64,000 bases of DNA, taken from Euprymna scolopes (Eukaryota). The DNA lies in assembly GCA_053919585.1 (NCBI GenBank), contig CM132798.1; one strand, 5' to 3'. Below, one piece after another: positions 2,263 to 63,685 of the stretch. The position numbers were made by a program, and so were the translations under genes. Within the stretch, counting starts at the first letter, position 1, and each line of letters begins with the position of its first letter. The notes beneath the pieces are model-generated. The model worked only from the letters and a program-made list of their open reading frames with translations. It had not been told where the DNA came from and did no database searches.

Positions 2263-2390
2263 CCTATCCTGTCACGGTTAACCACCTGATGAAGGCCAGA
2301 GAAATAGTTGGTCGAAACGTTGTGAAACAACAACTATAAAAATGAGGATAATAGTCCGCAAATAAGTAAATAAATAAAATAAACCAACAT
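2263..2390 (+). ncRNA. Minimal hammerhead ribozyme motif in a short 5'-truncated retroelement tail
   Basis: cac-CTGATGA(2286)-aggcca..tggtc-GAAA-cgtt-gtg; downstream tail matches the reverse complement of 26330-26415. Confidence 0.7.
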
Positions 2391-2475
2391 CTATTCCAAG
2401 TAAATTTTGATAAGTAAAATTTGAATTGACTTATGTCGATATAATAAATTGGTAGTGTTGTAATGATTGTATAAC

Positions 2476-3146
2476 ATACAAAGCACATTCCAAAAGTAGT
2501 GCCTTTTATTTATTTATTTTTTTGGAATGGGTCGGAAGGGATTGCAAATTTCATTTTTATGATGACTGAACTTATGCATTTATAATCTCAAATTTTCATC
2601 TCTCCGTTGCAGATATTGACTGTATAAGACTCTAATAAAGCAATCCGTTATGAACATGCATCAGAAGCAAAGATGCGTCATTGAACTCCTGGCAAAAGTG
2701 TATTGAAAATGGTGGTGACTATGTAGAAAAATAAAGTTTTTTTTATTTTATTTTAACCGTACCACTTGTTTTCATAGCTCTTTAACTTTTTTAGTTTAAA
2801 AAAAAAAAACAGGAGAATGGTGGTAACTATGTAGAAAAATAAATTACGAAGCTCAAAAGGTTGCTTGTTTTAATGGTACCACTCTTGTCTTCACAGTTCT
2901 TTAACATTTTGAGTTAAAAAAAAAAAATAGGAGTTTTTACTTTTGGAACAATGCTTGTATGATAAAACATGCTCTGAACGCCCATGCACAGCCATCATTC
3001 ATTGTTGGCAAAAGTGCATTGAGAATGTTGGCAACTATGTAGAAAAATAAATCATGGAGCTCAAAACGTTGCTCATTTTGATAGTACCATTCTTGTATTC
3101 ATAGTTGAACTTTGAATTTAAAAATACTTTTGAAATGATCCTTGTA
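2476..3146 (+). mobile_element. Non-autonomous mariner-type element with repeated 3'-end fragments
   Basis: Ends ..ttccaaaagtag / ttacttttggaac..gta; three copies of tggtggtgactatgtagaaaaataa (transposase C-terminus GDYVEK*); 5' end also seen at 22683-22815. Confidence 0.6.
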
Positions 3147-3561
3147 TTATTTAATATCCACTTCTTTAATTGAACCATGCATCATTGGTACACTTTCTGG
3201 TGCTACTAAATAAGGTCGTCTGAAGATATTGATGCTATTGTTTGTTTGTTTTTCTTTCTCTTTGCAAAATTCAATCCTCTTCTGCAAAGCCAAAAACAAT
3301 AGCAATGAAACTAAACACCATGAATAAATATTTAAAGATATAAAGGACTTGAAGCATGAAACTGTTTCCTAAATTATTGGATTTGGCATCAAATAACCTA
3401 AGAAAGGGTTGATATGCAATAAAACAAAACATTAATACACTTAGTTTTAACAAATCCATCCCTGGCTCACGAGTCATATTTTTGACAAATAAAATCAGTT
3501 ATGAATTAGTTTCTGCAATATTTGAAGTCATATTAAAGCACACAATATCTAAAATATTGAT

Positions 3562-3790
3562 GATATGGCTATGATCATGTTTACACACCGGTTCCCATAA
3601 GATCACCAAAGTTAAGCAACATTGAGCCTGGCTCATATTAAATGAGTGACCATTTAAAAAGACCAGATTCTATATGTAAGAGAATCCTTTAAAATTAATC
3701 TACAAGTCAGTAGTTTCTAAAAATCTGTGGGATTTCGGCATAAAATGACTCTACAATGGTTGACATAGTGTGAAACACAGCAATAATAAA
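3562..3790 (+). mobile_element. 5S rRNA-derived head with a SINE-like tail (body differs from the 39744 family)
   Basis: acaccggttcccataagatcaccaaagttaagcaacattgagcctgg matches metazoan 5S rRNA (A-box region) but is degenerate. Confidence 0.7.
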
Positions 3791-4283
3791 ACTGCCAATA
3801 TGAAGACAGCAACCACGTCCGATTTTCATTGGCGAAAACAAAAAAAAAAAATAAATTCATAAATGCTGTACCTAATAACAATTCTTGTTGAAGTAGTGCA
3901 ACTACTGATTTTCTTAATTGATTTTTTTTACAAGGATGAATAACTTATTTATTATTCATTTTTAAGTCTGAAAAGTTTTGCCATGAATATTGACCTATTT
4001 TTTTTTTTCTTTCATCAGAAATTAACATCTGTAAATATTTTGTGTGAGAAATACAATTCGACTATTATTTACAACAATTATCAGCTTTGGATACAAACTG
4101 TCTGGAAATTGCCAATCCCAGGACAATATCATTTTAGTTTTTAAAGTAACCAAGTAAATGATTAAAGCTTCTTCTCTAAACAATTCCACACTCACTTCCT
4201 ACACTTGTGCGATTTCAAGATAAATAATTTCCTAGGCATTACTACTCACAGACAAAAAATAATTGAACCAAATGTTGTCCATA

Positions 4284-5202
4284 TGAGGTGCCTTTGATAA
4301 GTTTCCATTTTTTTATGCAAGCATTTAAAATTATCATAGACTCATGAAAATTCAGTACGTTATTGCTATACGTCTTATAAGATAACTGGGCACTTTTTAT
4401 GATTTCAGATTCAAATGAACAGCTACAGCAGGATTTGGAATACACCCTACTAAAGCCTGATTGTCACAGCTGGTGAATTTCAAAAATGCAATCTGGACGT
4501 GAGGACATTTTTAGAAGAATGATATGCAATAAATTTCTGTTTTAAACTTGAAAATAATGGAACATATGAAATGCTTCAGACTGCTTTTGGACCATCTTGC
4601 ATTAATCGAGCATCAGTTTTTGAGTGGCATAAGAGATTCAAGATAGGCAGGGAGTGTAAGGGATGATGAGAGGTATGGGAGGAGTAAGGAAGTCAGAACA
4701 ATATAGTTGATTGGCCAAATAAAGAATTTCATGAATAAAGACCGTTGTGTATCATAAGAGACAATAAGTGCACAGTTTGATGTCAGTGTGGGAACTGTAC
4801 ACAAAATTATTCATGAGGATCTGAAGATGCAGAAGATTTGCATGAAGTTTATCCCAAGGGTACTCAGAGAAGATCAGAAAGACAGACATTGTCATGGGCA
4901 TCAAGACAGGTTCCTCACCCTCCCTATAGTCCAGACCTTTCTCCCTGTGACTTGATTATTCCCTAAACTTAATGAAAACCTTAGAAGTTGTCGTTTAGAC
5001 AACTGAGGTGATAAAAGAGGCTGTGACAAGGGTCATTGACGCGCTCACACAAGAGAACTTTTGTGACACTTTTCGAAAGTTGTTGGAACAGTGCATTGCA
5101 GTCAGAAGAGATTACTTTAAAGGGGACTAAAGTTTCATGTATGTTTTATCAATAAAAGTGTCCATCGGAAAAAAAGTCTGGAAACTTATTTAAGGTACCT
5201 TG
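4284..5202 (+). mobile_element. Internally deleted mariner (DD34D-type) transposon
   Basis: Imperfect TIRs (gaggtgcctttgataagtttcca / tggaaacttatttaaggtaccttg) with TA flanks; decayed transposase HTH and HPPYSPDL-PCD motifs; homologous to 56595-57531. Confidence 0.85.
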
Positions 5203-6729
5203 TAAATTCATTTTATCTTCACTTTATGGACATGTAACACTACTGGATTCATCATATAAAAGAAATGTGTAGTGTAGGTGTGTATCTGGCAAAAGTAAAA
5301 AAACTACACAAGGTACATTTTGAAACCTTACATCATCAGATTCAGTGTGACCCTCGATGAGATTGTGATTAAAAATATATTATAATATTCATTCCCTTGG
5401 ACTCACCAGTGACTGAATTAATGCAAGGAGTAGGAGCAGAAAAATACGTTTTTATTTTTATTATTGGTAGTTGTTTCCGAAACAACACTCACATTAGGGC
5501 AGTTGCTGATGACTTTTTCTTTCTTAGCTATTTTTGTCTTTTTTCTGTTATATTGAACCAGTTGCTAGAGAGAGAAAGAGGAGGAGGAGGAGGAGGAGGC
5601 GCAGTTGAAGAAGTAGAAACTGAAAAGTTTTAAAGGAAAGCTGTTACCTTTTTTAAACTCCTTTATTTTATAAAAACAATTATTTTTTATGGATTCATTA
5701 TTTATCACTGCAACAATTCTGACTTATTTATTCTCTACCTGTTTTGCATAACATTGTCAGGTGCGATGTCAAGGACCATTTTAAAATGTCCAAAACGTCA
5801 TACTCCAAAAATACCTAAAATCAGTCAAAAACATTTATTGTTATGCTAAAAACTGAAAATAGAGTTTACATAACTGTTATGGGTTCCGAAAAGTTTTAAT
5901 TTTGATAAAAAGATAAAAGGTCTAATTAAAAGCTCATAAAATGATCAAAATTTGTTCAAATTTAAGAGTTTATTTAAGTTTGTATCATTGGGGGATTATT
6001 TAATGCCAAATCGTAATTTTTGCAAACGATTTTATGTTTCTAATTTTACATATCTTCAAATATTTGTTTTGTATAAAATGAGTTTACACACAAATAATTT
6101 GTAAACGATAGATTTTACTCCACGTATAGATATCTCAACTGTCTGCATCTACTAATAATATGCCATCCATTGTGAATTGGCTTGCCTCTACTAGCACCTC
6201 TTCCTGTCATTATTCAACAGAATGCCTTGAGTCTTCTTTCAGCCTATTAAGGCAGCACGACATCAGACGAAACTTCCCAGTGTTTTGTATCTCAGAATTT
6301 ATTTTTTTTTTAATAAAAAGAATTTACTTTTAATATATTTTTTATTCAGTTTGATTTCGGTTTGTATGTGTTTTTAAAAAGAAATCTGTATAAATTAAAG
6401 ATGATTAAGCAATTGAAAAGAGAGAAGTAAACAAAAAAAAAAAAAAAGAAAGAAAAAGAGTGTAAATTGCTTTTACTTCCTGTGTAAATTATTGGTTTGA
6501 TGTTGTCAAATGTTAGGTTTAAAGCTGAGTAGATGTGTGGGTTATTGACCCCTACTTTTCATGTTGAAATGACATACAGAACTTGTTGAAGTGGCATTTT
6601 CAAAACGCTCCCCACTCCCGGAATATTTTATATGGAAGAAGATATCATCTTTCCTGGTTTGTAATCAAATAGTTTTCTTTTTCTAAAACTTGGTGTACAA
6701 ATAAGGAAAACTTACTAGCGTCACATCAC

Positions 6730-6798
<69 letters not shown>

Positions 6799-6801
<3 letters not shown>

Positions 6802-6919
6802 TGGGGAAAATAAGTGTTGGACACATCCCATTATTCTTTATTTTACACATTTTTTATGCAGCGAATGACGCGAACATTTAACAAGAAATAGTTACTAATT
6901 TAACAATTACAAATCACTG
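6799..6919. mobile_element. Short Tc1-like terminal fragment or mini-element
   Basis: TA|CAGTGGGGAAAATAAG... ending CACTG|TA next to a (TA)n tract. Confidence 0.5.
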
Positions 6920-6942: not shown

Positions 6943-7016
<74 letters not shown>

Positions 7017-7019
<3 letters not shown>

Positions 7020-8648
7020 TGATGATCATATTTATTGGCACGGTAAAATAAAAGTTAAATTTTGTCTAATAAATTCTAAAAAAGGGATTAAATTAAAGAA
7101 AATAACAAAGTATATTATGTATTTTTAACTGGCCTTTCTGATGCAGCAATCGGATTTTAGAAAAAATAAATAACAAAGGAACAACAAACATAATTGCAAA
7201 AACCCTTGTTCAAAATTATTGGCACGGCTTTGTTTTTCTTTTAGTATCAGTATAATATCAATCAATTTCCGGTTTACGTGCTTTCTGAACTTTTTTATAG
7301 CCATATTATGCTTGTTTAACGCTAATTCAGTGAATAATTTTTTTCAGATAATTTTTAGATAGTGATTTATTTACACTATTATAAGTGACTAAATTATAAT
7401 TTTCAATCGCCATGGTTAAAACTAAGGAACACAGCGAAGACGTCAGGAAGCTTGTTGTAGCATGCCATACCAATGGGGAGAGCTATGATAAGATTTCAAA
7501 GAAGCTAAACCTTCCCAAATCCACTGTTAGAGCCATAATAAACAAGTTCAAATCGCAAGGCCACGTTATGAGTTTAGAGGGTAGAGGGAGAAAAAGGATT
7601 CTTTCCCCAAGAGATGAACGGAAAATTGTTCGACAAGTAAAACAAAACCCAAGGATCTCTGTTGGGGAGATTGTTGATGAACAGAGCACCTCTGGAGTGA
7701 ATGTATCTCGACATACAGTTGGTAGAGTTTTGAAGAGAGCTGGTTTAAAAGCATGTCGTCCGAGAAAGACTCCCTTATTGAAGCCTATGCACCTGAAAGC
7801 AAGGCTAGCCTTTGCAAAACGTCATATTGATAAAGATGTTGCATTCTGGAAACGTGTTCTATGGACTGACGAAACGAAAATAGAGTTATTTGGCCATAAT
7901 AAAGTGTCTTATATTTACAGAAAATCTGGCGAAGCTTTCCTGCCTAAGAACACCATACCCACAGTGAAGCACGGTGGAGGCAGTTTGATATTTTGGGGAT
8001 CCTTTGCTGCCTCTGGACCAGGGCGACTTGTTAAGGTCACAGGTAGCATAAAAAAGGAAGATTATGTTAAAATATTGGATGAAAACCTGAAAGACTCTGC
8101 TAAAGAGCTCTCACTTGGTTGTCGTTGGTGGTTCATGCAAGATAATGACCCAAAGCATTCGGCTAAACTGACTAAGAAATGGCTTGAGGACAATCATATT
8201 AATGTTTTGGAGTGGCCATCACAAAGCCCAGACCTTAATCCAATTGAAAATTTATGGAGAACATTAAAATTGAGGGTAATGCAAAGGAAGCCTAAGAATC
8301 TTATTCAATTGGAGGATTATTGTCAGGAAGAGTGGGCTAAAATTACTACTGAAGAGTGCAACAACTTGGTTGTAAACTATGAAAAGCGACTGAGGAAGGT
8401 AATCAAGGCCAAAGGCTATACAATTGATTATTAAATAAATCGTGCCAATAATTTTGAACAAGGGTTTTTTGCAATTATGTTTGTTGTTCCTTTGTTATTT
8501 ATTTTTTCTAAAATCCGATTGCTGCATCGGAAAGGCCAGTTAAAAATACATAATATACTTTGTTATTTTCTTTAATTTAATCCCTTTTTTAGAATTTATT
8601 AGACAAAATTTAACTTTTCTTTTAGCGTGCCAATAAATATGATCATCA

Positions 8649-8651
<3 letters not shown>
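7017..8651 (+). mobile_element. Full-length Tc1-family DNA transposon with IR/DR-type long TIRs
   Basis: TIRs 7017-7226 and 8441-8651 (~210 bp; about 3 substitutions and 1 indel); CAGTG..CACTG termini; TA flanks in (TA)n; ttattggcacg at both ends of each TIR; intact transposase. Confidence 0.97.
7412..8434 (+). CDS. Tc1-like transposase, DD34E, 340 aa, intact
   Basis: Paired-like HTH N-terminus, GRKR linker, WTDETK / QDNDPKH / SPDLNPIE with 34 residues between D2 and E; AATAAA at 8434-8439. Confidence 0.97.
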   Translation: MVKTKEHSEDVRKLVVACHTNGESYDKISKKLNLPKSTVRAIINKFKSQGHVMSLEGRGRKRILSPRDERKIVRQVKQNPRISVGEIVDEQSTSGVNVSRHTVGRVLKRAGLKACRPRKTPLLKPMHLKARLAFAKRHIDKDVAFWKRVLWTDETKIELFGHNKVSYIYRKSGEAFLPKNTIPTVKHGGGSLIFWGSFAASGPGRLVKVTGSIKKEDYVKILDENLKDSAKELSLGCRWWFMQDNDPKHSAKLTKKWLEDNHINVLEWPSQSPDLNPIENLWRTLKLRVMQRKPKNLIQLEDYCQEEWAKITTEECNNLVVNYEKRLRKVIKAKGYTIDY

Positions 8652-8686
<35 letters not shown>

Positions 8687-8687
<1 letters not shown>

Positions 8688-8908
8688 CAATTCCCAATCA
8701 CACCTCTCCTGAATCGGCATTGCTTAGGTCCAGTGGCAAAGAGAGGCCTAAGATGGACTGGAAACAATGCTGAGATAAATGGAGAGCACATGCAGTACGT
8801 GGAATTCCCAAATAATCACCCATGTTATTATATGCCGCACAATCACATTGATCACTGGTTCCCGCCAGATCCCCTAAGTTAAGCAACGTTAAGTCTAGTC
8901 AGTACTAG
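8687..8908 (-). mobile_element. 5S-derived SINE copy with inverted 5' head
   Basis: 8687-8823 is the reverse complement of the 5S 3' part plus SINE body (as at ~39823-39960); 8829-8908 is the 5S 5' part on the + strand. Confidence 0.8.
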
Positions 8909-9529
8909 TATATATCTGGCATGACCAGATCAAAATATATTGTCGAGTGGAAGGTTAAGTCACATTCTATTTAAGATACATTGAATATCCTAACTTGTTA
9001 CGATTTTCTTGAAAGTGGATCACATGTTTTATTTATGGAAGCATAAAACACATTCATCTTCATCTACGAAAACCAAGCAGGAAATAACTCTCATAGCTTA
9101 AATAAATAAACGATGCTTCCGTTTTTAAACACAACTGATGTTGGCTAATAATAATTAAAAATGAATATAAATTAAATTAAAAATAAATTAAATAAATCAA
9201 CTTTAAATAATATCCATAAACAGAACAATTAAAACAATTCTATTACTAAAGATTATTAATGACATGGAGCTAATTGTTAAAATAAATTTTCTTTAATGTA
9301 ATATGCAAATGAAGTAACTTCTTTAATGTAGATTTCCTTTGAAAAAATAGTATATATAGAAATCACCCTGGAATAAAAATGTATATAAATCCATTACAGT
9401 ATGAAAATTAATTTGTGAAACGGAATATTTTTTGTACATATTAATTAAATTGGGAACAAATAAACGGACAAGAATACGACTTCAATTATAATAGATGTAT
9501 ATAAACTATATTTTTCAAATAAATATTAA

Positions 9530-10015
9530 CAATTATTTTTTTACCTACAGACACTAGTGTTTCATGTTTATGCAATCGTCAGTGTAGGAAGTGATAATTA
9601 CTGCTAGTGGTGAGATTCAAAACCAGTCATAACGCCATCCTTGGTTTCCTTCAAGCCACTGGCAATTAACACATAAATGGAAGGAAATTAAGTACCTATA
9701 AATACCATATCGGTGGGCACTCACAATAACCAGTTAGAAAGTATTCACTGATAATATTGCATTAAAACTAAAGTTGACTATTTTTTTCTCAATGTCATAA
9801 TTTAATTTCGTAAAGGGGTTTTATAGCTATAATATTTTTCATATTATTTTCTACTTGTGGTTCATGCTTATGCAATGATCAGAGTAGAAAGTGATAATTA
9901 CTGCTGGTCGGGAGATTTGAGCCGCAAAGCTAACATTGGCTTCATAAGCTAGTATCTTTCCCTCAGGCAGACGACAATTAACACAAGGATTGAACAGAAT
10001 TAAGTATTTAGAAAT
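9530..10015 (-). mobile_element. Two tandem copies of a short element with A/B-box-like head and hammerhead tail
   Basis: 9540-9720 and 9850-10015 are homologous; second hammerhead (9850-9890) is degenerate. Confidence 0.65.
9544..9588 (-). ncRNA. Type I hammerhead ribozyme motif
   Basis: Minus strand cctaca-CTGACGA-ttgcataaacat-GAAA-cactagtg-TC-tgtagg; perfect stem I, palindromic stem III, GUC site. Confidence 0.85.
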
Positions 10016-10369
10016 GACATGTCTAATTTTTTTTTTTTTAAATGAATAAAATCATTTAATATAAAACTAAGACTTTTGACAAGTAAAATGTCATTTTCAA
10101 AGCAAAACTTTTCAGTTTTTGTGTGTTAATTCAACTGGTATTAGCTCATGAGGCTAGCACAATATATGTCTGCCTAAGTTTTAAAGTAAATTTTGGGGTC
10201 AATGTGTGTTTAGTTGGCTCTTTTTTTTTAATTGAAGGAGTTGTTACATCTTAGAAAAGCAATATTTAAAAAGAAATTTACAAACCAAATAATGTCATTT
10301 TTTTTAATGAATAAAATTATATAATGCCTGAAATGATGAAATTGCTCAATTACATATACATTACATAAA

Positions 10370-10422: not shown

Positions 10423-11059
10423 AAGAATACTATACATTAGTTTTATCTTCCATCATTACCTTTTTGGTTTAAATATCAAAAAATAAGAATAAATAATGCA
10501 GTACTTAGTCAGGGTCAGAGTTTATAATACGATGATGAAGTTTATTATTTTTTTATTGGTATGTATCCGTGTTTCGACTGTTTTTCTTACATTTTCTTAA
10601 CCAAAGCCTTTTTTTTTGCACGTGCTGCATATTTTCAAATCATTAACTTGAAAAAACATCTCGGTTAGTGTCTTTTTTTCTTACATCTTGCTGTTTTTTC
10701 TCATTAAATTTAAAATCTTAACAGCTCCTGAAAACGTTCCTTGATCCAAACGAAATCAGTCGTTTTTTTAATTTCTTCCTGTGTGTAATTATTTTCTTTT
10801 CTGCCTTTCATAAAATCTGTCTCCACGACTTTTCATTTTATGACATATTGTATTTTATCCTCGTGTATCGCATATATATTAAATGGAAAGTCTAATCTTT
10901 ATATGCTTATTCAATTATATTTCACCCTTTATTTATACCAATCCTTTTATTCATGAAGCTCGATGTATGTTGAATATAACTACAGAGCATATACAAATAA
11001 ATGACAAAAAAAGTCCAAATTCCAACATCTTGGAATTTTGAATGTAGACTTTTTGTTTT

Positions 11060-11850
11060 ATAATTATTTTTTAATACCTACAGACACTAGTGCTTCATCC
11101 TTTCGGGGGTACTCATCAATGGAGAGTGTCACGATCACCGCCAGTCAAGAAATTTAAACAAAGCCATCTCTGACTCCATTAGCAAAGAACAAACCCAAAC
11201 GGCCAACGTTAACCACGATAAATACAGTTGAAATTTAAACATTTTTTTTTAATGTCAAGACAGTGATAGTGATCTAATGATTATGACATCATGATCTGCG
11301 CGTGTAAGCTTAAGTCACCGACTTTTAACTTCAACTTAGAATGCTCAACAATAAGAACAGAGTTCTTAAAGGGACTGACATAATTAATTATTACTGTTAT
11401 ACCGGCTTTCCTTGAACAGAGGAATTTACACCGATTAGCACTATAAATAGCATTAGTAATTCCAACACCAGTGAGAGAGATGCGACTGCACTTCAATTGC
11501 TAGCCGAGTGCCCAGCAGATATACACGCTTTCCTATCTTTGTACATTATTGTTAATACACTTGTTCCTTAACCGAACTTCGACTTGATTGTTCTTATTTT
11601 CACTGTTGTTCCATGACACAACAATTACTATAATTATTTTTTAATACCTACGGACACTAGTGTTTCATCCTTTCGGGAATCATCAGTGCAGGGTGTCACA
11701 ATTACCGCCGGTTGGGAGATTCGAAGCCGATAACGATGCCATCTTCGACTCCATTAGCAAGGAATAAACCCAAACGGTCAACGTTAACCACGAGAAATAT
11801 GGTTGAAATTTAAACATTTATTTTTAAATTTCAAGACGGTCGGTTTTAAT
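11060..11850 (-). mobile_element. Two further copies (11060-11260, 11630-11850) of the hammerhead-tailed family
   Basis: Shared ttaatacctac-gacactagtg..tcatca..gccatct..gactccattagcaa..caacgttaaccacg. Confidence 0.75.
11647..11692 (-). ncRNA. Type I hammerhead ribozyme motif
   Basis: Minus strand cctgca-CTGATGA-t[tcc cgaaa gga]t-GAAA-cactagtg-TC-cgtagg. Confidence 0.8.
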
Positions 11851-51714: not shown

Positions 51715-52334
51715 TGAATTGAGTCCAAAACAATAAATCTTAAGGGGTTATAATAGGGGTCAAAGTTTAAAAAAATTTGACCTCTGCGGTCTCTACCAAA
51801 TTACTCAGACAATTTCTGGTCTAAACATTTGAAATTTTACATAAAGGGTATTCAGAGATAGGGCAAGCTTTTTAATCGGTTTGGGTCGAAAATTTGAGTT
51901 ACCAATATATAAATGTATGTATGTATGTATGTATGTTTGCATGTCTGCCTAAAAATTTTGACAGAGGTGACAGATTTTTACAAGATCAGTATCGTTTTGA
52001 AGTTCGACCTTTCAGATGACAAATATAAAAAAATTGGCTAAAAACATTAATATCTTCACCTTCAACTAGGCACTTTTCTACAGGGGGAGGGGCTCACTTT
52101 TTTTGCCGATATTTTCAAAAGTCATCCTCTCCTTTCAATTGTCTAGCCTTAATTTAAACCTACATCACTTCAGTTTGGTGGTGGTCTTAACAGCAAAGAC
52201 GTCAGATTTTTTTCCCATTCTTTTCCTCCTTTGTGGTACAGATTCGAGCCTGCCTTCCAACTACCACTTTTTTTTTTTTTTTTTGCTCAACATACACCTC
52301 CAAACACCCGGGCAACGCTGGGCTGAAATGCTAG
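51715..52334 (+). mobile_element. Non-autonomous Helitron, long form, 5'-truncated
   Basis: Reverse complement of 58950-59560; hairpin plus CTAG|T. Confidence 0.75.
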
Positions 52335-52830
52335 TATATTACGTATGAAAGATGCCACTGTTTAATCTCCACAGGTTCCACTAGTTTTATATGAATATTT
52401 TAGGAATACATCTGACGGTGTGCAATAGAATAACTCGTCTTCATCGATTAATGAAATAATGGACAGTAGTTTGGGTTAAGATGGAGGGGGGGTATATTTA
52501 ATTCAAGATTAACAAAAAAAAAAAAAAAAAAAAACTGTGGAAACCTGAAATAAAGAAAATGAATACATCTACGATTGAATATGACGTTTCTTCTGGCCGA
52601 AGGCTTTTTCTTGTGTGCCACATTAATTGCTCATTATTAGCAGATTAAATATGATGTATGATATAGCCATTGGGTAATTGTTCATTATAATTGCTGTCAT
52701 ATGTCGAAAATCATGGTTGAAAATTATCTAATTTATTCTCTATCTGCATTGATCAAATAATACTTAACCTGAAAAGTACGATACATCTAAATTGAATCTA
52801 TTATTCTATGTGTGTGTGTGTGTGCGACCC

Positions 52831-53118
52831 ACGTACGGTATAACTACATTGACACACCGGTTTTCGTGAGATCAGAGTTAAACAAATGTTGAGCCTGGCT
52901 AATACCAAATGGGCAACCATTTAGGAATTCTAGGTGCTGTATGTCCTCTCCGCTTATCTCAGCATTGTTTCCAGTCATCGTGAACCTTTACTTGCCAATG
53001 GTATTTAACAACACCAACTCAGGAGAGGTTTGGTTGGATTATGCAACTTTTCCACAAATATTTCATGCGCAGACACCCTTACAGTCGGTATCCTTAGTCG
53101 TTTAAGAGTGCAGGAAGT
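52831..53118 (+). mobile_element. 5S rRNA-headed SINE
   Basis: Colinear with 39744-40050. Confidence 0.8.
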
Positions 53119-53128
53119 TTTCTATAAC

Positions 53129-53172
53129 CCATGCTGATGACGCTTGATAGCTAGAAACATGCATATTCATGG
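53129..53172 (+). ncRNA. Hammerhead ribozyme motif
   Basis: ccatg-CTGATGA-cgcttgatagcta-GAAA-catgcata-TT-catgg; perfect stem I. Confidence 0.7.
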
Positions 53173-53431
53173 CTATACCTTTTATGCATGTAATAATATT
53201 TAATAATAAAAAATAAATAAAAATACATCCCATAAAAAATACGGGGTGACTCATATATAAATGTATATGAATAAGAAAAGGAACTTATAGCTCTTTAACA
53301 AAAATGCTAATGTAGCAAAAAAAAAAATAAATAACGGCATTTCAAAGCTGTTAATATTGCTTTAAAAAAAAAAACACCAACAAAAAATCTTAAATTTAAA
53401 AGTGATAAAAAACCGTGCATTCAAGTGGTGA

Positions 53432-53534
53432 GTCATTGTAGCTCATTGGTAGAATGCCAGACTATGGATGCAGATGTCATCAGTTTGATCATAACCCATG
53501 CTGATAATGGCTGAAAGCTAGAAATATGCATGTA
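53432..53534 (+). mobile_element. tRNA-like head fused directly to a degenerate hammerhead
   Basis: tagctcattggtaga (A box)..gactatggat..gtttgatc (B box), then ccatg-CTGATAA-tggct gaa agcta-GAAA-tatgcatg-TA. Confidence 0.65.
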
Positions 53535-53542
53535 ATAATAAT

Positions 53543-53614
<72 letters not shown>

Positions 53615-54889
53615 TAAAAAAACTTATGTTACATATTTCAAAAAAACATACCATGGTTTCATTGATGTGGATTCATTTACCATTTAAAAGGCCACTAAAA
53701 CATCATCAAATCATTAGTAACTCACAAAATGAAAATCAATCAAATAATGATATTCAAAGCAAATTCACTAGTAAATCCTACCGGTGGACTCCATTTTTTC
53801 ATTTGTTTTGATTTTGTGGGTCATTTCTGATTTGAATGGATTCTTAATGGCCTTTAAATGGTATGTTTCTGAAATATTTAATGCATAGTTTTTAAATAAA
53901 TAATCTGTATTTTAGCTCTTGCATTTACAATCAAGCACTTTATTGATTTTTTTTCAACACAACCTGACACACACACGCACACACATACTAAAAGAAAAAA
54001 ATGGGTAAAATTAATTTTTAAAAATGGGTAAAATTAATTTTTAAAAATGGGTAAAATTAATTTTACACTCAAACTTTTATGCAAAAATTAAAATATATAA
54101 TATTATAAATATATAATGATGCTAAACCGTATACTTTGAATCCTTATTCTCATTTTGATCAAAATTCGTTACATTGTTTTTGATTTTTAGAAAATTTCTA
54201 AAATGTCAGGCTTTAGCTTAAAAAGTATTAATAATAAATTAAATTCTAGGGAATCTTACTTAATTGTTGTCTAAATTGAAGTACATATAACCTATATTGT
54301 CCATTTTTATGCCTGGCAAGTGTGTTCCAACATTCGTAATGATTTGTTTAGGAATTTATGCTGTACAATAAAATATAATTTCCATACATGTACCTCTTAA
54401 ATATTAACGTTTGCAAAAATACAATCTGCCCATGTTACTTACGATAAAATTTATAATAATTCTTCCATTAGTTATGATATTATCTAAGAATATCGTCTCC
54501 AGTTAAATTAATGCTCTAAACAGTTTGCACCACTTCTATGTCCTTTTCAAAGATTAAAATCACAATATATAATCATACTAAACCTTTTGTCTAGAATCCT
54601 TATTTAATCTTGATCAAAATCCATTGCATTATTTCGATTTTAGAAAATGTCTAACATTTAAGGTTTAACCCTAAGGGGTCTTCAGAAGAAATTGAAATTC
54701 AGGGAATCTTGATATATTACTGTCTATGGATTAACTGCAGTACAAATGTGATATGCTTAAAATTTTTATGAAAGGTTGTGCCCATATTATGCTCCCAAAA
54801 ACCATTTAAAATATTCCAAAAGAACTTGAGTTTGTGAAATATTTATTAATTAAATTATTATTATTATTATTATCATTATTTTTATTTAT

Positions 54890-55829: not shown

Positions 55830-56165
55830 TGTTATTATTCAAATATGTACAATTTTGTAAAAGTTCAACGAAAAACTTGTTATTATTCAAATATGTACAA
55901 TTTTGTAAAAGTTCAACGAAAAACTTGTTATTATTCAAATATGTACAATTTTGTAAAAGTTCAACGAAAAACTTGTTATTATTCAAATATGTACAATTTT
56001 GTAAAAGTTCAACGAAAAACTTGTTATTATTCAAATATGTACAATTTTGTAAAAGTTCAACGAAAAACTTGTTGTTATTCAAATATGTACAATTTTGTAA
56101 AAGTTCAACGAAAAACTTGTTGTTATTCAAATATGTACAATTTTGTAAAAGTTCAACGAAAAACT
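55830..56165. repeat. Minisatellite, 48-bp unit x7
   Basis: tgttattattcaaatatgtacaattttgtaaaagttcaacgaaaaact repeated; one variant in the last two units. Confidence 0.97.
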
Positions 56166-57531: not shown

Positions 57532-58063
57532 TAGTTTTCTTTATCAATGAAAAGGAATGCGTGTAAGCATTTTAATCAAACAAAACACGTAACTATTAGC
57601 TTCATTTATATTCTGCTAAATGACCCCCCCTCCCGATGAAGATTGTTAACATCTTACATAATGTGCAAATAAAATGAATTTTGAGGTAACAGAAACCATG
57701 TGTTCGTGTGTTGATACAAACATTTACCTTTTTAATTTGAACAACATGAGTTCTGTCTATATCAGTGAAATAAGAAAATGTGAAATTTCAGATTGTCTTA
57801 ACATGTAATAAGTGTCTGAATTTAAATTTAAAAAATTTAAGCATCATGTAAATAAAGTAGAGGATAAAATGAAAGAATTTACCCTAATTATTCAATGAAA
57901 ATAAATGGTGAATTTCAGGAAATGTATTTTACTAAAAAATTAATTGACATTTCAGTTTTTTACTAATTAATTCTGATTAACCGATTACAGAATTTAAGTG
58001 ATTTGTCAGATGCAATGCTATTGCTAACATTGAGAATTCAAATGACTTTATTTTATATATATA

Positions 58064-60339
58064 CTAGCATGGGTGCCTGATATTTCCCAAGTGTTTTGAG
58101 GTGTGTGTTGAACAAAAAAAAAAAAATTAAAAAAGTGGTAGTAGGAAGGCAGGCTCGAACCTGTACCGTAAAGGAGGAAAAGAATGGGGAAAAAACGTGA
58201 CGTCTTTGCTGTTATGACCACTGCCAAACCGGAAGTGACGTAGGTTTAAATTAAGGCAATCGAAAAGAAGGGATGACTTTCGAAAATATCGCCGAAAAAA
58301 GCAACCCCTCCGTGTAGAAAAGTGCCCAGTTGAAGGTGAAGAGATTAATGTTTTCAACCAATTGTTCGGTATTTGTCGTCTGAAGGGTCGAGCTTCAAAA
58401 CGATACCGATCTTGTGAAAATCCATTGCCTCTGTCGAAAGTTTTATGCAGACATACATTTATATATTGGTAACTCAAATTTTCGACCCAAACCGATTAAA
58501 AAGCTTGCCCTATCTCTGAATACCCTTTATGTAAAATTTCAAATATTTAGACCAGAAATTATCTGAGTAATTTGGTAGAGACCGCAGAGGTCAAATTTTT
58601 TAAAACTTTGACCCCTATTATGACCCCTTAACATTTATTGTTTTGGGTTCATATCAAGTTATTAAATTAGATCCATGTCCAAGGAACCTATATCTAAAGT
58701 ATCAATTGTTTATACCCAAAATTGTCGGAGGAGTTTGGTAGAGTTCTCAAAGGTCAAACGTTGAACTTTGACCTCTTAACAGCCAAATTTCTGGCCGAAA
58801 ACCGATTAGAAAGATTTTCCCAAATTTCAATACCCTGTATATCAAATTTCGAGTCTGTAGACCGAAAATTGACAGAGTTATTGTATAGGGAAATGTACAC
58901 AGACAGACAGACAGACACTTTCACTTTTATAGAGATATATATATATATAATAGCATTTCAGCCCGGCGTTGCCCAGGTGTATGGATGTGTTTGTTGAGAA
59001 AAGAAAAAAACAAAGTTGTAGTAGAAAGGCAGGCTCAAACCCGTACTGCGAAGGAGGAAAAGAACGGGTGAAAAACAAAAACGGATGTCTTTGCGGTTAC
59101 AACCACCGCCAATCCTGAAGTGACTCATGTTTAAATTAAGGCTAGACAATCAAAAGGAGAGGATAACTTTCAAAAAATATCGGTGAAAAAAGCGCCCCCC
59201 CTATAGAAAAGTGCCTAGTTGAAGGTGACGATATTGATGTTTTTAGGCAATTTTCTGATATCTGTCATATGAAAGGTCGAACTTTAAAACGATACTGATC
59301 TTGCTAAAATCTGTCGCCTTTGTCGAAAGTTTTAGGCACACATGCAAACATACATACATACATACATACATTTATATATTGGTAACTGAAAACCGATGAA
59401 AAAGCTTGCCCTATCTCTGAATACCCTTTATGTAAAATTTCAAATGTTTAGACCAGAAATTGTCTGAGTAATTTGGTAGAGACCGCAGAGGTCAAATTTT
59501 TTTAAACTTTGACCCCTATTATGACCCCTGAACATTTATTGTTTTGGGCTCAATTCAAGTTATTAAGTTAGATCCATATCCAAGGAACCTATATCTAAAA
59601 TTTCAAGTGTTTAGACCCAAAATTGTCGGAGGAGTTTGGTGGAGTTCTCAAAAGTCAAATCCTTGAACTTTGATCCCTTAGCAGCCAAATTTCTGGCCAA
59701 CAACGGAACACAAAGATTTTCCCAAATCTCAGTACCCTTTCTATCAAATTTCGAGTCTGTAGACTTAAAATTGACAAAGTTATTACGTAGGGAAATGTAC
59801 ACACACCCACACAAACACACAGACACAGACAAACAGATACACAGACACATTCACTTTTATAGATATACTAGTATGGGTGACCGGTGTTGCCTGGATGTTT
59901 GGAGGTGTATGCTGAGCAAAAAACGGTCAATTTTTTTAACGTTGACCCTTTTATGACCCCTTAACATTTATTGTTTGGGGCTCAAATCAAGTTATTAAGT
60001 TAGATCTATGTCCAAGGAACATATATCTAAAATTTCAAGTGTTTAGACCCCAAATCGTCGGAGGAGTTTGGTAGAGTTCTCAAAGGTTAAATCGTTGAAC
60101 TTTGACTCCTTAACAGCCAAATTTCTGGGCGAAAACCGATCACATAGATTTTTCCAAATCTCAGTACCTTGGATATCAAATTTCGAGTCGGTAGACTAAA
60201 AATTGACAGAATTATTGCGTAGGGAAATGTACACACACACACACACGTTCACTTTTATAGATATATTTATTTAATATTACGTTTAATTTGACTTATTGGT
60301 TTCTGAAAAAATGACAAATGCGGGCTCTCTTTTCTGCGT

Positions 60340-60389
<50 letters not shown>

Positions 60390-60766
60390 TAGTATGGGTT
60401 CCCGGCGTTGCCCGGGTATTTGGAGGTATATGTTGAGCAAAAAAAAAAAAGTGGTCAATTTTTTTAAATTTTACCCCTATGGCCCCTTAAAATTTATTGT
60501 TTTGGGCTCAAATTAAGTTATTTAGTTAGATTAATGTCCAAGGAATCTATATCTAAAATTTCAAGTGTTTAGACCCAAAATTGTCGGAGGAGTTTGATAG
60601 AGTTCTCAAAGATCAAATCGTTGAACTTTGACCCCTTAACAGCCAAATTTCTGGCCGACAACCGATCACATAGATTTTCCCAAATCTCAGTAACCTGTAT
60701 ATCAAATTTCTAGTCTGTAGACTAAAAATTAACAGAGTTATTGCATAGGGAAATGTACACACACAG
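58064..60766 (-). mobile_element. Head-to-tail array of four non-autonomous Helitrons (58064-58935, 58950-59862, 59868-60261, 60389-gap)
   Basis: Each begins on + with (C)TAG plus a cccggcgttgcccggg-type hairpin; the first three end cacttttatagA; two long and two short forms. Confidence 0.85.
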
Positions 60767-62206
60767 NNNNNNNNNNNNNNNNNNNNNNNNNNNNNNNNNN
60801 NNNNNNNNNNNNNNNNNNNNNNNNNNNNNNNNNNNNNNNNNNNNNNNNNNNNNNNNNNNNNNNNNNNNNNNNNNNNNNNNNNNNNNNNNNNNNNNNNNNN
60901 NNNNNNAAATGTCTCTACATCATATTTCAAAACATAGACTTTCTTGATGAGGGCAATCTTTTGAGAAGAAACGTTCACCAGGATGAATAAGAAATGAAGT
61001 TTTCATAAAAGCATTTTAATATTGTTTAGAATGTTTCCTGTGAATAGAAATTTAGAAAAAAAACAAGTACTTGGAAATATCTTGACTTAAAAATTTTTTT
61101 ATAAAAATTACTTACAAAAACCGTGTATACTATAAAATACATAAAGAAATTAGTGTTGGAACAATAAATTGGAATCGGAAAGATCGGAACGTTTTGGGCT
61201 ATTGTCATTAGTATCAGAATCAGAAAAAATTGAACCGGATTTCTAATGCCAAAAACTATTCTTTTACTCATTTTTTTTTTTAAACACTAAATTGCCTATT
61301 TCTGTTTTTCTGGCACAGGTGAAAAATATAAATGAAAATCTTACAATGAGTTTATCAAAATCTTCGATGTAATAGATAGACATTATATTTGCGTTTAAAA
61401 GTAGATGAGGATGCTTTTATTTTATTTATTTTTTTACTGTTATTTTCACTCCAAACAAGGCAGAGTGCCACTTCGACATAACAGGCTAATATTTGGGATA
61501 AAATTTACAAGTATACAATGTAGGGAGTTGAGCAGCAAAATGTCTGTTCACATTACATTTGAACTTCTGCATGTCAGTATAGTCAGGGAAGCATGGATTC
61601 GGGAGGGAATTCTAAAATTTAACAGTTTGAGGGAAAAATCTATAGAATGAATCTATGAATAGAAGGCATTCTAGCAGCTAAGGATCTTTTCAGTATAGAG
61701 GTAGGATTTTGCTGGTGTGAAGGTATCTACTTCATGGGAGTACAAGAGCACATTTAGATAGTGTATCATTAGACAAAAAAAAAAAAAAAAGAAATCAAAT
61801 TTTACTTTTTTTTAGGCAATTTTAGAATCTGAATGGATAACTGTATCAGAATTAGAAATTGTATTGGAATTGGTGAAAAATATTGGAATCATCCCATCAT
61901 TAATAGACATATTTGATTTTGTGATTATGGTATAAGGAATAGATGGAGAGTATTGGGAGTTTTTTCTTAAAAGTCTGAAGTTATATTGATGTGTTTAAAA
62001 AAGAAAAACAATTGAAAGACATTTTTTATTAATTAAATTTAAACAGCTTTGTGCTTTTCCATCGATAGGTTTCTCCTGAGATTTTCTCTGTTGGCAGACA
62101 CTAATATCATAGATTCTTTCGATTGTTGCATATCCTCGACAATAAATTTGACTTCTTTTTTTTTTTTCATGTTTCATTTTCAAAAGTATGATCATGACTA
62201 GGTGTT

Positions 62207-62429
62207 CCTATTTACTTGCTTCCCCACGAGGGAAGAGTTGTACACAAAGTTGGTTTTTAATGTGGAGAAAATCCAACTTCCCTAAAAGGGGCACTCTGGA
62301 TAGTAATAAAAATAAAAATTGCCTCAATCTAGAAACATTTCCCCTCTACTGATTGAGGTCAGAAAAGGTGAAGCATAGTATCAGAACAGATACTACACTT
62401 TGCTCCTAGTCAGAAGGCCAAGGAAACAT
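62207..62429 (-). mobile_element. Full-length U2 snRNA-headed SINE-like element with TSD
   Basis: Reverse complement atgtttccttggccttctgactaggagcaaagtgtagtatctgttct head; atcatgactag(g/t)tgtt at 62191-62206 and 62428-62443. Confidence 0.9.
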
Positions 62430-63394
62430 CATGACTAGTTGTTACTTCTGGATTATCTACATAAGTGAAACAAATTTTCTTAACACCTTAAAATCAGCAA
62501 AACCTTTTATGATGTATGGTTTAGCTAAAATTCGAGCTGAAATTGTAATATTCATCTTTATTAATCTTTATTATACCACGCAGGTAAGCTTACAAATCAG
62601 TTGTTTAGCTTTCATATGCGATTCTGGTTAACCCTAAAATCATACCCTTCATCTTTGCCAATTCTGTTTTCCCATTATTTTATACTCGTAACAGAAGGAA
62701 ACTAAAGCTTTTTACCGTAACAAGGGCTGAAGAATAAAGCAGTTTTCGTAACAACTTAAAATTTCTGCAAAATTTTTAAACAAAGCATTTTTGTAGATTT
62801 CCTCTGATGCTCAAGAAATGTTACGAGGAATGTTAAATGATTTACCTTCTGAGATGATCATAAAAAAATGATCTCAACTGAAAATCATGTGATAAATATA
62901 TAAATCCTGCAGCTGTGTAATAGAGCCTTGCTTCCTTTTATAATTCATGATGTGGCAGACGTACATGCCTTCGAGACCTATTCAGTATGGATTCTGCTAT
63001 TTATATAAATATATTAAAAAAAATTAAGTGTATTTTTTAAACCCAGATTTTATGTGGTTAAAATTGTTAAAAAGTAAAAAAGCATCAGTTACTGAAAAAC
63101 GAGTGTTTCAGAATTTTTTAGATGAGGATTGATAATTTTTATCCTGTGATAAAAAAAAAAAAAAACCCAAACACCTAACTGTTTTCCTATGCATGATGAG
63201 TGATTGAGAGCATTACTTAACATAAGCAAACATTTAAAGTGCAAAATAGTTTTCTGCAAAATATTCTCACAGACTCTGAGGAAAGATTTTTTTAATCCAT
63301 TCTTAAAAACAAAAACTGTATGGAAAGCCATCACTTTATCATAAGGTTCTTAGAATTATAAGCAAGTAGTTGCTTGAATTATTTGATTTATTCA

Positions 63395-63685
63395 AGCTAC
63401 TGTTCTCATCTTGAGTGTTATCCACACAACGATTCAGCCGATGTAACCTCTGACCTTCTTCAGATGTATTTTGTTGAGGTCTAGAATCTTTCTGTCAAAG
63501 TCAGGAATCTGCATGGAATTTTGAATGGAATCCTTTATTAAATCCTCCGGACAGCATGCTCTCATTCCATCAGCCGTCACTGAGTAGATGTCTTAATGAA
63601 TTTGCAATTGTATTTTTCGTATTACTTGCATTGAGGATTGAGCCTTCATTTTCCAGAGTGCTTTATCCATTACACCACAAACCTC
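63395..63685 (-). mobile_element. tRNA-headed element with degenerate hammerhead tail
   Basis: Head tggtgtaatggataaagcac..ggctcaatcc; tail CTGAAGA-aggtcagaggttacatcggct-GAAT-cgttgtg; related fragment at 38505-38570. Confidence 0.6.

What the first reader, a model, noticed from the sequence alone, without database searches (positions are those of the whole stretch)
2263..63685. High density of hammerhead motifs: about 15 from at least six unrelated short families
Seen: motifs at 2286, 9544, 9850, 11077, 11647, 14094, 24318, 24542, 26374, 26986, 38513, 39123, 39183, 48900, 53129, 53496 and 63425, several of them degenerate. Stem sequences are unrelated between families, but the CUGANGA/GAAA/UH core and palindromic stem III loops (ACGT, CACTAGTG, CATGCATG, GAATATTC) recur. 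Palindromic stem III is the known hallmark of hammerheads that cleave as dimers. No PLE coding sequence is visible. Inference: a large, diverse population of non-autonomous retrozyme or PLE-dependent elements, roughly one motif per 4 kb here.
Basis: partly seen in the sequence, partly recalled or inferred. Interest (0 to 1): 0.8.

Follow-up and report, generated by a model that had tools for sequence, protein, structure and literature searches.

The report
Hammerhead-ribozyme retroelement relics, Penelope-type insertions
This 64-kb stretch of a cephalopod-like mollusc genome really is littered with copies, mostly decayed, of at least six unrelated short mobile elements that each carry a self-cutting hammerhead RNA motif, and their insertion scars point to Penelope-like retrotransposons as the copying machinery; this is a known kind of element and has been seen repeatedly elsewhere in this genome.

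Summary
Of the 17 listed sites, 10 have an intact hammerhead core: 2286, 9582, 11686, 24362, 24548, 26412, 27048, 39171, 39188 and 53134. Five are mutated copies homologous to an intact family member. Two (14099, 48941) cannot be told from chance. Descriptor scans give 4-5 fully formed motifs against 0.06-0.07 in dinucleotide shuffles. Rfam's hammerhead models detect none of them.

The motifs fall into six unrelated families:
- F1 is a textbook Penelope "min-HHR".
- F2 and F5 have a palindromic helix III, and F2 cofolds as a double hammerhead.
- F3 and F4 have a stable helix III and fold as monomers.

The motifs sit near the 3' end of short non-coding units, followed by AT-rich tails of 20-65 nt. 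Four loci carry an inverted copy of their own tail at the 5' end, one carries a direct repeat of it, and several abut (TA)n. All of these are published hallmarks of Penelope-like element insertions.

No RT or GIY-YIG domain turned up in the ORFs scanned. No tandem arrays were found, and no RNA ends fall at the cleavage site.

Best reading: dispersed relics of hammerhead-tailed, Penelope-mobilised elements. Some have tRNA-like or 5S-like heads, and some are just truncated 3' ends. The scan has already reported this phenomenon on other pieces of this genome. It is a new member of a known kind.

The parts
2276..2331 (+). F1 min-type hammerhead, core intact (CUGAUGA-A-GGCC..GGUC-GAAA-CG-UU); 5'-truncated copy 2272-2394 with A-rich tail
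   Evidence: 83% identical over 110 bp to 26315-26426
2234..2267 (+). direct repeat of the last ~34 nt of the F1 tail (copy at ~2363-2394), immediately upstream of the truncated copy
   Evidence: score 19 vs 10.3+-1.7 in shuffles
26310..26612 (-). F1 unit of about 300 nt: tRNA-like boxes (TGACACAGTGG..GTTTCAATCCT), body, hammerhead 26367-26422 (core intact, helix III AUGU), ~55-nt tail
26613..26665 (-). inverted copy of the F1 tail abutting the 5' end of the 26.4k unit
   Evidence: score 29 vs 15.6+-2.2; z 5.5
38503..38575 (+). F1b hammerhead relic, dead (GAAA>GGAA)
63401..63690 (-). F1b unit: tRNA-like 5' half (TGGTGTAATGG..GGCTCAATCCT), body, dead hammerhead (~63415-63473, GAAA>GAAU)
39721..39741 (+). 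fragment of an F1b hammerhead (CCUGAAGAAGGUUG..UUACAU) just 5' of a 5S-like SINE
9531..9760 (-). F2 unit; hammerhead 9534-9589, core intact, helix I 6 bp, helix II weak, helix III palindrome CACUAGUG
9830..10060 (-). F2 unit, dead hammerhead (core at ~9882: G8C, A15.1C)
11059..11264 (-). F2 unit, dead hammerhead (core at ~11119: C3U, A15.1G)
11629..11840 (-). F2 unit of about 215 nt starting at (TA)n(CA)n: B-box-like GCTTCGAATCT, hammerhead 11637-11693 (core intact), 22-nt AT tail
24278..24367 (-). F3 left arm: hammerhead (24312-24369, intact, predicted cut 24323|24322) + 45-nt tail ending in (TA)n
24543..24632 (+). F3 right arm: hammerhead (24541-24598, intact, predicted cut 24587|24588) + 45-nt tail; 82/90 identical to the left arm in inverted orientation; 175-bp spacer between arms
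38991..39262 (.). F4 element between two (TA)n runs: 107-bp unique part plus a 165-bp hairpin (39098-39262, arms 81/82 identical) made of two head-to-head hammerheads (39119-39179 minus, 39180-39240 plus; predicted cuts 39128|39127 and 39231|39232)
13719..13926 (.). second F4 copy between (TA)n runs, with a shortened hairpin lacking both ribozyme cores
   Evidence: one DNA contig with the matching 39132>39209 joint
52826..53230 (+). 5S-rRNA-like head (52831-52945, 35.6 bits) + ~170-nt body + F5 hammerhead (53127-53174, core intact, helix I 5 bp, helix II poor, 16.2 G>A) + A-rich tail; whether this is one element or two adjacent insertions is not settled
53436..53547 (+). F5 copy with by-eye tRNA-like boxes (TAGCTCATTGG..AGTTTGATC), dead hammerhead (G8A), ending at about the cleavage site in (TAA)n(TA)n
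   Evidence: not supported by Rfam tRNA model or ARAGORN
26984..27110 (-). single-copy hammerhead (26984-27055): core, helix II (5 bp) and helix III (6 bp) intact, helix I broken; inverted copy of its own tail at 27082-27110, next to (TA)n 27105-27144
   Evidence: z 7.7
14093..14143 (+). hammerhead-like site with C3>U, single copy; not distinguishable from chance
   Evidence: descriptor D (7 real vs 1.33+-1.3 expected); no homologue
48893..48946 (-). hammerhead-like site with GUAAA in place of GAAA, single copy; not distinguishable from chance

Best explanation
The window holds dispersed, mostly dead copies of at least six unrelated families of short non-coding retroelements. Their 3' module is a type I hammerhead ribozyme followed by an AT-rich tail of 20-65 nt. 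Some units of about 215-350 nt begin with a Pol III-type head: tRNA-like boxes in F1/F1b and F2, and a 5S-rRNA-like head next to F5. Others (F3, F4, 27048, 2286) are only 5'-truncated 3' ends. Inferred mechanism: the unit is transcribed from its own head or by read-through. A Penelope-like element's RT/GIY-YIG protein, supplied in trans, recognises the hammerhead/tail end, cuts AT-rich or (TA)n DNA and copies the RNA by target-primed reverse transcription. Frequent 5' truncation and template switching then produce the inverted or direct partial copies at the 5' end. The hammerhead can cut multimeric or read-through transcripts, as a monomer in F3 and F4 and as a dimer in F1, F2 and F5. Shown here: motif integrity, enrichment over chance, family structure, folds, inverted and direct tail copies, high copy number and the depth gradient. 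Inferred only: Penelope dependence, transcription from the heads, and self-cleavage.
For: Motifs far exceed shuffles. C15.2-G16.2 and the 1.1-2.1 pair are kept in the intact families. Compensatory changes occur in F2 helix II (UUCC..GGAU vs UUGC..GCAU) and in F3 helix I (G-C vs A-U at 2.6-1.6). F4 (both copies) and F3_24362 fold by MFE into the three-way junction. F2 cofolds into a double hammerhead with a 10-bp intermolecular helix III. F1 has all the published min-HHR traits of Penelope elements (PMC4209133). Inverted copies of the own tail lie at the 5' end in four loci and a direct one at 2286, as described for PLEs in PMC8557442. Element ends abut (TA)n at F3, F4, F5_53501, F2_11686 and 27048; 5 of 17 motifs lie within 100 bp of (TA)>=8 vs 1.4 expected, P 0.008. 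F4 is very high copy, with depth falling about 5-fold from tail to ribozyme. Other genomic copies keep the core and differ at N7 and in loop 2. No RT/GIY-YIG domain in the ORFs scanned.
Against: No Rfam hammerhead hit at any threshold tried. Fold z-scores are not significant. 10.1-11.1 is A-U (F3, F4) or U.U (F2) rather than the usual G-C. tRNA-like heads are not called by ARAGORN or the Rfam tRNA model, and box pairs upstream occur in only 2 of 17 loci vs 0.32 expected, P 0.04. The (TA)n association by independent loci is only P 0.05-0.14. Poly(A) RNA reads show no ends at the predicted F4 cleavage site, and most reads come from other copies or read-through. No Penelope element with a matching tail was available for comparison.
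Confidence: 0.7

Rival explanations
1. The copies are animal-type retrozymes: tandem arrays whose transcripts self-cleave and are ligated into small circular RNAs that serve as transposition intermediates.
For: F2 and F5 occur as same-strand pairs 300-570 bp apart. The palindromic helix III of F1, F2 and F5 suits dimeric cleavage in multimeric transcripts (PMC4209133, PMC7229834). Earlier unchecked notes report young tandem arrays elsewhere in this genome.
Against: TRF finds no hammerhead-bearing array of period 150-500 in the window. The tails after the cleavage site do not match the unit starts, so the copies are not circular permutations. The joints listed for the F4 stretch include no back-joint at the hammerhead element, and there are no RNA ends at the cleavage site.
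Confidence: 0.15
2. F1 (2286), F3, F4 and 27048 are not dedicated short elements but 5'-truncated 3' ends (pLTR pieces) of full-length, possibly autonomous, Penelope-like elements.
For: Only the hammerhead plus tail is retained at these loci. F4 depth falls from tail to ribozyme, and other copies continue upstream with different sequence. PLE insertions are mostly 5'-truncated (PMC8557442). Earlier unchecked notes list GIY-YIG relics followed by hammerheads in this genome.
Against: F1_26412 and F1b_63463 show a short unit with tRNA-like boxes about 180-215 nt upstream of the ribozyme rather than coding sequence. No RT/EN remnant is seen near any copy.
Confidence: 0.3
3. The motifs are chance matches or decayed, functionless look-alikes in AT-rich repeats.
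For: No Rfam hammerhead hit. Seven of 17 cores are broken. 14099 and 48941 are single copies within the chance expectation for one-mismatch matches. Fold z-scores are not significant.
Against: There are 4-5 fully formed motifs vs 0.06-0.07 expected. Six families independently keep GAAAC...GUH and paired helices, with compensatory changes. The F4 core is kept in many other genomic copies.
Confidence: 0.03
4. They are ordinary LINE-mobilised SINEs that happen to contain a hammerhead.
For: A-rich 3' tails in F1 and F5. Pol III-like heads.
Against: Inverted 5' arms at four loci, a partial direct repeat of the tail, (TA)n targets and a ribozyme close to the 3' end are Penelope signatures, not LINE ones. 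No poly(A) or short TSD was seen.
Confidence: 0.07

Closest known systems
Minimal hammerheads (min-HHR) in the pLTRs of Penelope-like elements (Cervera & de la Pena 2014, PMC4209133)
   Same: F1/F1b have the extra unpaired base between A9 and 10.1, a G10.1-C11.1 pair, a long helix II (6 bp), a short helix I, a palindromic 15.2-16.2 (CG) and no loop 3. The ribozyme lies near the 3' end.
   Different: Here it sits in a non-coding unit of about 300 nt with tRNA-like boxes, not next to an RT/GIY-YIG ORF. The host is a mollusc lineage for which I found no published description.
Schistosoma Sm-alpha / Sj-alpha SINE-like elements with a hammerhead (from my own knowledge; the Schistosoma hammerheads are mentioned in PMC4209133)
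   Same: A short, Pol III-headed, non-coding dispersed repeat carrying a type I hammerhead with a weak, palindromic helix III.
   Different: Several unrelated families coexist here, one possibly with a 5S-like head. Here the heads rest only on box matches by eye and a weak upstream-box test. Some families (F3, F4) have a stable helix III.
Metazoan non-LTR retrozymes (Cervera & de la Pena 2020, PMC7229834; Li et al. 2026 preprint 10.64898/2026.07.22.740005)
   Same: Non-coding, AT-rich units of 170-400 nt with type I hammerheads, proposed to be non-autonomous derivatives of Penelope-like elements.
   Different: Retrozymes are defined by head-to-tail tandem arrays and circular RNA. This window has only dispersed, truncated or inverted copies and no evidence of circles.
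Penelope-like element insertion architecture (Craig et al. 2021, PMC8557442; Frangieh et al. 2024, PMC11167929)
   Same: 5' truncation, an inverted 5'-truncated copy at the 5' end, partial direct repeats, a tail beyond the ribozyme, and (TA)n bias. As in this window, no RNA-seq ends were found at the hammerhead cut site of the active anole element.
   Different: No coding part is present here. The tails vary from 20 to 65 nt.

Membership tests
Type I hammerhead ribozyme | Conserved core C3 U4 G5 A6 N7 G8 A9 ... G12 A13 A14 ... A15.1-U16.1, H17 not G | tested here: met
   Met at 10 sites. Not met at 7 sites, each with one or two substitutions or an insertion.
Type I hammerhead ribozyme | Three helices around the core, helix I open, with helices II and III closed by loops | tested here: met
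   F3 and F4 meet the strict descriptor, and their MFE gives the three-way junction (F4 both copies, F3_24362). F1, F2 and F5 meet it only with a minimal or palindromic helix III. 27048 lacks helix I.
Type I hammerhead ribozyme | Match to the curated covariance models (Rfam RF00163 and relatives) | tested here: not met
   No hammerhead family is listed at gathering score or at E<=10, on the whole window or on four sub-stretches.
Type I hammerhead ribozyme | Self-cleavage 3' of H17 | tested here: inconclusive
   Poly(A) RNA-seq shows no pile of ends at 39231|39232, but depth there is 35-100 and reads are mostly from other copies. The same negative result is published for an active PLE (PMC11167929). 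An in vitro assay is needed.
Penelope-type min-HHR | Unpaired base between 9 and 10.1; G10.1-C11.1; palindromic 15.2-16.2; no loop 3 or a palindromic one | tested here: met
   F1_2286 and F1_26412 against the criteria in PMC4209133. F2 to F5 are not of this subtype.
Dimer-dependent hammerhead | Helix III too weak as a monomer but self-complementary, so that two copies form an extended helix III | tested here: met
   F2 dimers form a 10-bp intermolecular helix III, with a gain of -5 to -8.8 kcal/mol. For F1 (ACGU) the predicted dimer uses another palindrome. F3 and F4 do not need a dimer.
Penelope-like-element-mobilised insertion | Inverted 5'-truncated copy at the 5' end and/or a partial direct (pLTR-like) repeat; a tail beyond the ribozyme; 5' truncation | tested here: met
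   Inverted tail copies at F1_26412, F3, F4 and 27048 (z 5.5-16) and a direct one at 2286. F4 depth gradient. The other loci show none.
Penelope-like-element-mobilised insertion | Microsatellite, (TA)n, target bias | tested here: inconclusive
   5 of 17 motifs lie within 100 bp of (TA)>=8 (P 0.008), but counted by independent loci P is 0.05-0.14. Several element ends abut (TA)n directly.
Penelope-like-element-mobilised insertion | A partner PLE in the same genome sharing the 3' hammerhead/tail module | not testable with these tools
   No access to the rest of the genome. Only unchecked first-reader notes of GIY-YIG relics with 3' hammerheads exist.
Animal non-LTR retrozyme | Head-to-tail tandem repeats of 150-450 bp, each with a hammerhead | tested here: not met
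   No such array by TRF. The F2 and F5 pairs are separate, diverged units.
Animal non-LTR retrozyme | Expression as unit-length linear and circular RNA | tested here: inconclusive
   Only one stretch (F4) could be laid. No back-joint at the hammerhead element is among the joints listed (most joints were not shown). The libraries were poly(A) reads or contigs.
SINE (Pol III-headed) | tRNA- or 5S-derived head with internal promoter | tested here: inconclusive
   The 5S-like head at 52831-52945 scores 35.6 bits (gathering score 38), but its link to the hammerhead is unproven. tRNA-like boxes were seen by eye; A+B box pairs lie upstream at 2 of 17 loci, P 0.04. No ARAGORN or Rfam tRNA call.

The most novel reading that the evidence does not exclude
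The hammerhead-plus-tail cassette may be the recognition module for Penelope-like RT/EN, captured repeatedly by different Pol III heads. The same F5 hammerhead module follows a 5S-rRNA-like head at 52.8k and tRNA-like boxes at 53.4k. That would make these elements a SINE/LINE-style partnership for Penelope elements, with 5S-headed members as a new variant, and it would give the long-unexplained hammerhead of PLEs a testable role in template recognition.
Probability: 0.25. Interest if true: 0.6.

Novelty: new member of a known kind. Interest (0 to 1): 0.4.

Why it matters
It adds a cephalopod-like mollusc to the animals whose genomes carry many, very diverse hammerhead-bearing non-coding retroelements. 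It also links them to Penelope-like elements through insertion scars (inverted 5' arms, tails, (TA)n targets) rather than through phylogenetic distribution alone. And it shows that Rfam-based annotation misses these motifs completely, so published counts such as the 235 Hammerhead_1 hits in the giant squid genome (PMC6962438) probably underestimate them. The role of the hammerhead in Penelope biology is still open. Families with monomer-competent (F3, F4) and dimer-type (F1, F2, F5) ribozymes side by side in one genome would be useful material for testing it.

Tried and rejected
- Rfam cmscan, on the whole window at gathering score and at E<=10 and on four short stretches, found no hammerhead. 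It found only 5S-like and U2-like hits and hairpin-type miRNA false matches on the F4 palindrome.
- ARAGORN found no tRNA at default settings. With lowered thresholds it did not call the heads I had flagged by eye; it consistently called only the 420-bp family.
- Pfam on 29 ORFs gave only a Tc1/mariner transposase. Relics shorter than 80 aa were not scanned.
- Single-strand fold z-scores were uninformative for these short AT-rich motifs.
- The one read-laying run showed copy number and variants but no cleavage-site ends or circles.
- Pairwise alignment of the 3' ends of the two 5S-headed copies was too weak to decide whether the 39.7k copy ends in half a hammerhead.
- Look-ups of earlier notes by sequence returned nothing.
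- I did not build a custom covariance model, because training it on the window's own motifs would have been circular.
- I considered the F4 hairpin as a possible assembly artefact and could neither confirm nor exclude it. No listed contig bridges its centre, although head-to-head copies are expected for Penelope-type insertions.

Full report
**What the window is.** It is AT-rich (GC about 31%) eukaryotic DNA with six assembly gaps. Public runs that hold it come from one coded organism plus "mollusc metagenome" samples. It contains 5S-rRNA-like and U2-like repeats. Repeats of this kind are reported in the tens of thousands (5S) and about 1,300 (U2) for a decapod cephalopod genome (PMC6962438). 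Earlier notes of this scan call it a 5.9-Gb mollusc, probably cephalopod, genome. I did not verify the species.

I parsed each against standard hammerhead numbering.
- Ten have an intact core (CUGANGA, GAAA, A15.1-U16.1, H17): 2286+, 9582-, 11686-, 24362-, 24548+, 26412-, 27048-, 39171-, 39188+ and 53134+.
- Seven are mutated: ~9882-, ~11119-, 14099+, 38513+, 48941-, 53501+ and 63463-.
- Five of the mutated sites are homologous to a core-intact copy.
- 14099 and 48941 are single copies. About 1.3 one-mismatch matches per window are expected by chance, so I do not count them.

Against dinucleotide-preserving shuffles:

| Descriptor | Window | Shuffles |
|---|---|---|
| Perfect core, helix I 5/6, helix II 4/4 | 4 | 0.07+-0.25 |
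| Variant allowing one extra base after A9 | 5 | 0.06+-0.24 |
| Core-only CUGANGA-N7-45-GAAA | 18 | 5.7+-2.4 |
| Bare heptamer CUGANGA | 47 | 20.2+-4.9 |

The important negative is that Rfam's hammerhead models report none of these motifs. This held on the whole window and on four stretches of 0.4-2.9 kb at E<=10. No motif touches a gap.

**Families and ribozyme types.** There are six unrelated families.
- **F1/F1b** (2286, 26412, 38513, 63463, plus a fragment at 39721) reads CUGAWGA-A-GGCC..GGYC-GAAA-CG-UU. It has an unpaired base after A9, G10.1-C11.1, a 6-bp helix II, a short helix I, palindromic 15.2-16.2 and no loop 3. These are exactly the traits that Cervera & de la Pena list for the minimal hammerheads of Penelope-like elements (PMC4209133).
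- **F2** (9582, ~9882, ~11119, 11686) has a 6-bp helix I and the palindrome CACUAGUG as helix III. Its short helix II shows a compensatory change between subfamilies (UUCC..GGAU vs UUGC..GCAU). As a monomer it misfolds. Two copies cofold into the classical double hammerhead with a 10-bp intermolecular helix III.
- **F5** (53134, 53501) has a consensus helix III of CAUGCAUG, damaged differently in each copy.
- **F3** (24362, 24548) and **F4** (39171, 39188) have a stable helix III. The MFE fold of both F4 copies and of F3_24362 is the three-way junction. F3 helix I shows a G-C to A-U double change between its two copies.
- **27048** keeps its core and helices II and III but has lost helix I.

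All intact families keep C15.2-G16.2.

**What carries the motifs.** In every family the ribozyme lies near the 3' end of the repeated segment and is followed by an AT-rich tail shared between copies. The tail is about 22 nt in F2, 45 nt in F3 and about 65 nt in F1.
- F2 is a unit of about 215 nt. The 11686 copy starts right at a (TA)n(CA)n run.
- F1_26412 and F1b_63463 are units of about 300 nt with an A-box/B-box pair 125-215 nt upstream of the ribozyme and a shared tRNA-like 5' half.
- The tRNA-like heads are weak evidence. Neither ARAGORN nor the Rfam tRNA model calls them, and the box test is only P 0.04.
- The F5 hammerhead at 53134 follows a 5S-like head (35.6 bits) and a body that the 5S-like SINE at 39744-40057 also has. 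The same hammerhead module at 53501 follows tRNA-like boxes. Whether 5S head and hammerhead form one element could not be settled from two copies. Unchecked first-reader notes report the same combination on other pieces of this genome.

**Insertion scars.** I tested every locus for a second copy of its own tail upstream.
- Four independent loci have an inverted copy: F1_26412 (z 5.5), F3 (z 12.5-13.5), F4 (z 10.6-16) and 27048 (z 7.7).
- At 2286 the last ~34 nt of the tail recur as a direct repeat immediately upstream of a copy truncated 14 nt before the core.
- F3 and F4 are thus head-to-head pairs of hammerhead plus tail, with the tails facing outward. The F4 arms are 81/82 identical and joined 8 nt upstream of the core. 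The F3 arms are 82/90 identical with a 175-bp spacer.
- F4 lies between two (TA)n runs. A second F4 copy at 13719-13926, also between (TA)n runs, has a shortened hairpin without the cores.
- Several other element ends abut (TA)n. Statistically the association is suggestive only: P 0.008 by site and 0.05-0.14 by locus.

These features are the published signature of Penelope-like element insertions: hammerhead near the 3' end, a tail, 5' truncation, an inverted 5'-truncated copy at the 5' end, partial tandems and (TA)n bias (PMC8557442; PMC11167929).

**Coding capacity.** Twenty-nine of the 42 ORFs of at least 80 aa were scanned against Pfam. The only mobile-element domain found is a Tc1/mariner transposase. 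I found no Penelope RT or GIY-YIG domain, though short relics are not excluded.

**Reads.** On 38400-40200, the F4 element and the neighbouring 420-bp family are extremely abundant in the organism's DNA contigs.
- Depth falls about 5-fold from the F4 tail part to the ribozyme part, as expected for 5'-truncated copies.
- Loose ends from dozens of contigs show that other copies keep the core and differ at N7 and in loop 2, both free positions. They also continue upstream with other sequence, so they are not hairpins there.
- Poly(A) RNA reads cover both strands about equally, and 62% run on into unlike sequence. They therefore come mostly from other copies or read-through.
- No pile of ends occurs at 39231|39232, and no back-joint at the hammerhead element is among the joints listed.
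- The same absence of cleavage-site ends was reported for an active anole Penelope element (PMC11167929), so this says little either way.

**Tandem arrays.** TRF finds none that contain a hammerhead. The animal-retrozyme definition (PMC7229834) is therefore not met in this window.

**Conclusion.** The most likely reading (about 0.7) is a graveyard of hammerhead-tailed retroelements of at least six families, inserted by Penelope-like machinery. Some have Pol III-type heads and some are mere truncated 3' ends. Most of their ribozymes are now dead. Rival readings:
- Truncated ends of autonomous Penelope elements, for F3, F4 and 27048 (0.3, not exclusive of the main reading).
- True tandem or circular retrozymes (0.15).
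- LINE-dependent SINEs (0.07).
- Chance (0.03 for the set, but likely for 14099 and 48941).

The kind of element is known from Sm-alpha, the PLE min-HHRs, animal retrozymes and a 2026 preprint proposing retrozymes as PLE derivatives in vertebrates. I found no paper describing it in cephalopods. This scan has already reported the same phenomenon on other DNA of this genome. It is therefore a new member of a known kind and of moderate interest.

Noticed in passing
window 38575-38991, 39286-39678, 51715-52339, 58054-60766: A 420-bp repeat family of extremely high copy number (summed contig word depth in the millions), with a tRNA-Thr-like fold that relaxed ARAGORN calls in four copies. It starts right after (TA)n, forms a partial array at 58-60.7k that is cut by the gap at 60767, and has no hammerhead.
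   Followed up: partly
window 3561-3678, 39744-40057, 52831-53110, 8688-8941 (minus): A 5S-rRNA-derived SINE-like family. Two copies exceed Rfam's 5S gathering score. The 39.7k copy is flanked by (TA)n on both sides. The first 60 nt of its head are about 4-fold richer in the 'RNA?' runs relative to DNA than neighbouring repeats.
   Followed up: partly
window 12458-12628, 13209-13380, 14295-14527, 16341-16554, 20467-20644, 62204-62421: Six copies of a U2-snRNA-derived repeat (best 42.3 bits, below the gathering score of 46). I saw no hammerhead in them.
   Followed up: no
window 6983-8685: An apparently complete, young Tc1/mariner DNA transposon: an open 340-aa transposase (7412-8434; HTH_Tnp_Tc3_2, DDE_3) between 245-bp inverted repeats that are 98% identical, with (TA)n at both outer ends.
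   Followed up: partly
window 23381-23415 and 24809-24843: The sequences at the outer edges of two assembly gaps are inverted copies of each other (94% over 35 bp). The 1,053-bp contig between the gaps, which holds F3, may be misoriented or may lie inside a larger inverted repeat.
   Followed up: no
window 48200-48650 and 54259-54709: A 451-bp direct duplication, 98.9% identical, 6 kb apart. It carries one of the chance CUGAAGA...GAAA matches.
   Followed up: no
window 55830-56165 and 111-549: Two very homogeneous minisatellites: 48 bp x 7 at 99% and 32 bp x 13.8 at 96%.
   Followed up: no
window 38400-40110: A nest of insertions into one (TA)n tract, in this order: F1b relic, 420-bp unit, F4, 420-bp unit, F1b fragment plus 5S-like SINE, each separated by leftover (TA)n. 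It shows that several unrelated families use the same microsatellite target.
   Followed up: partly
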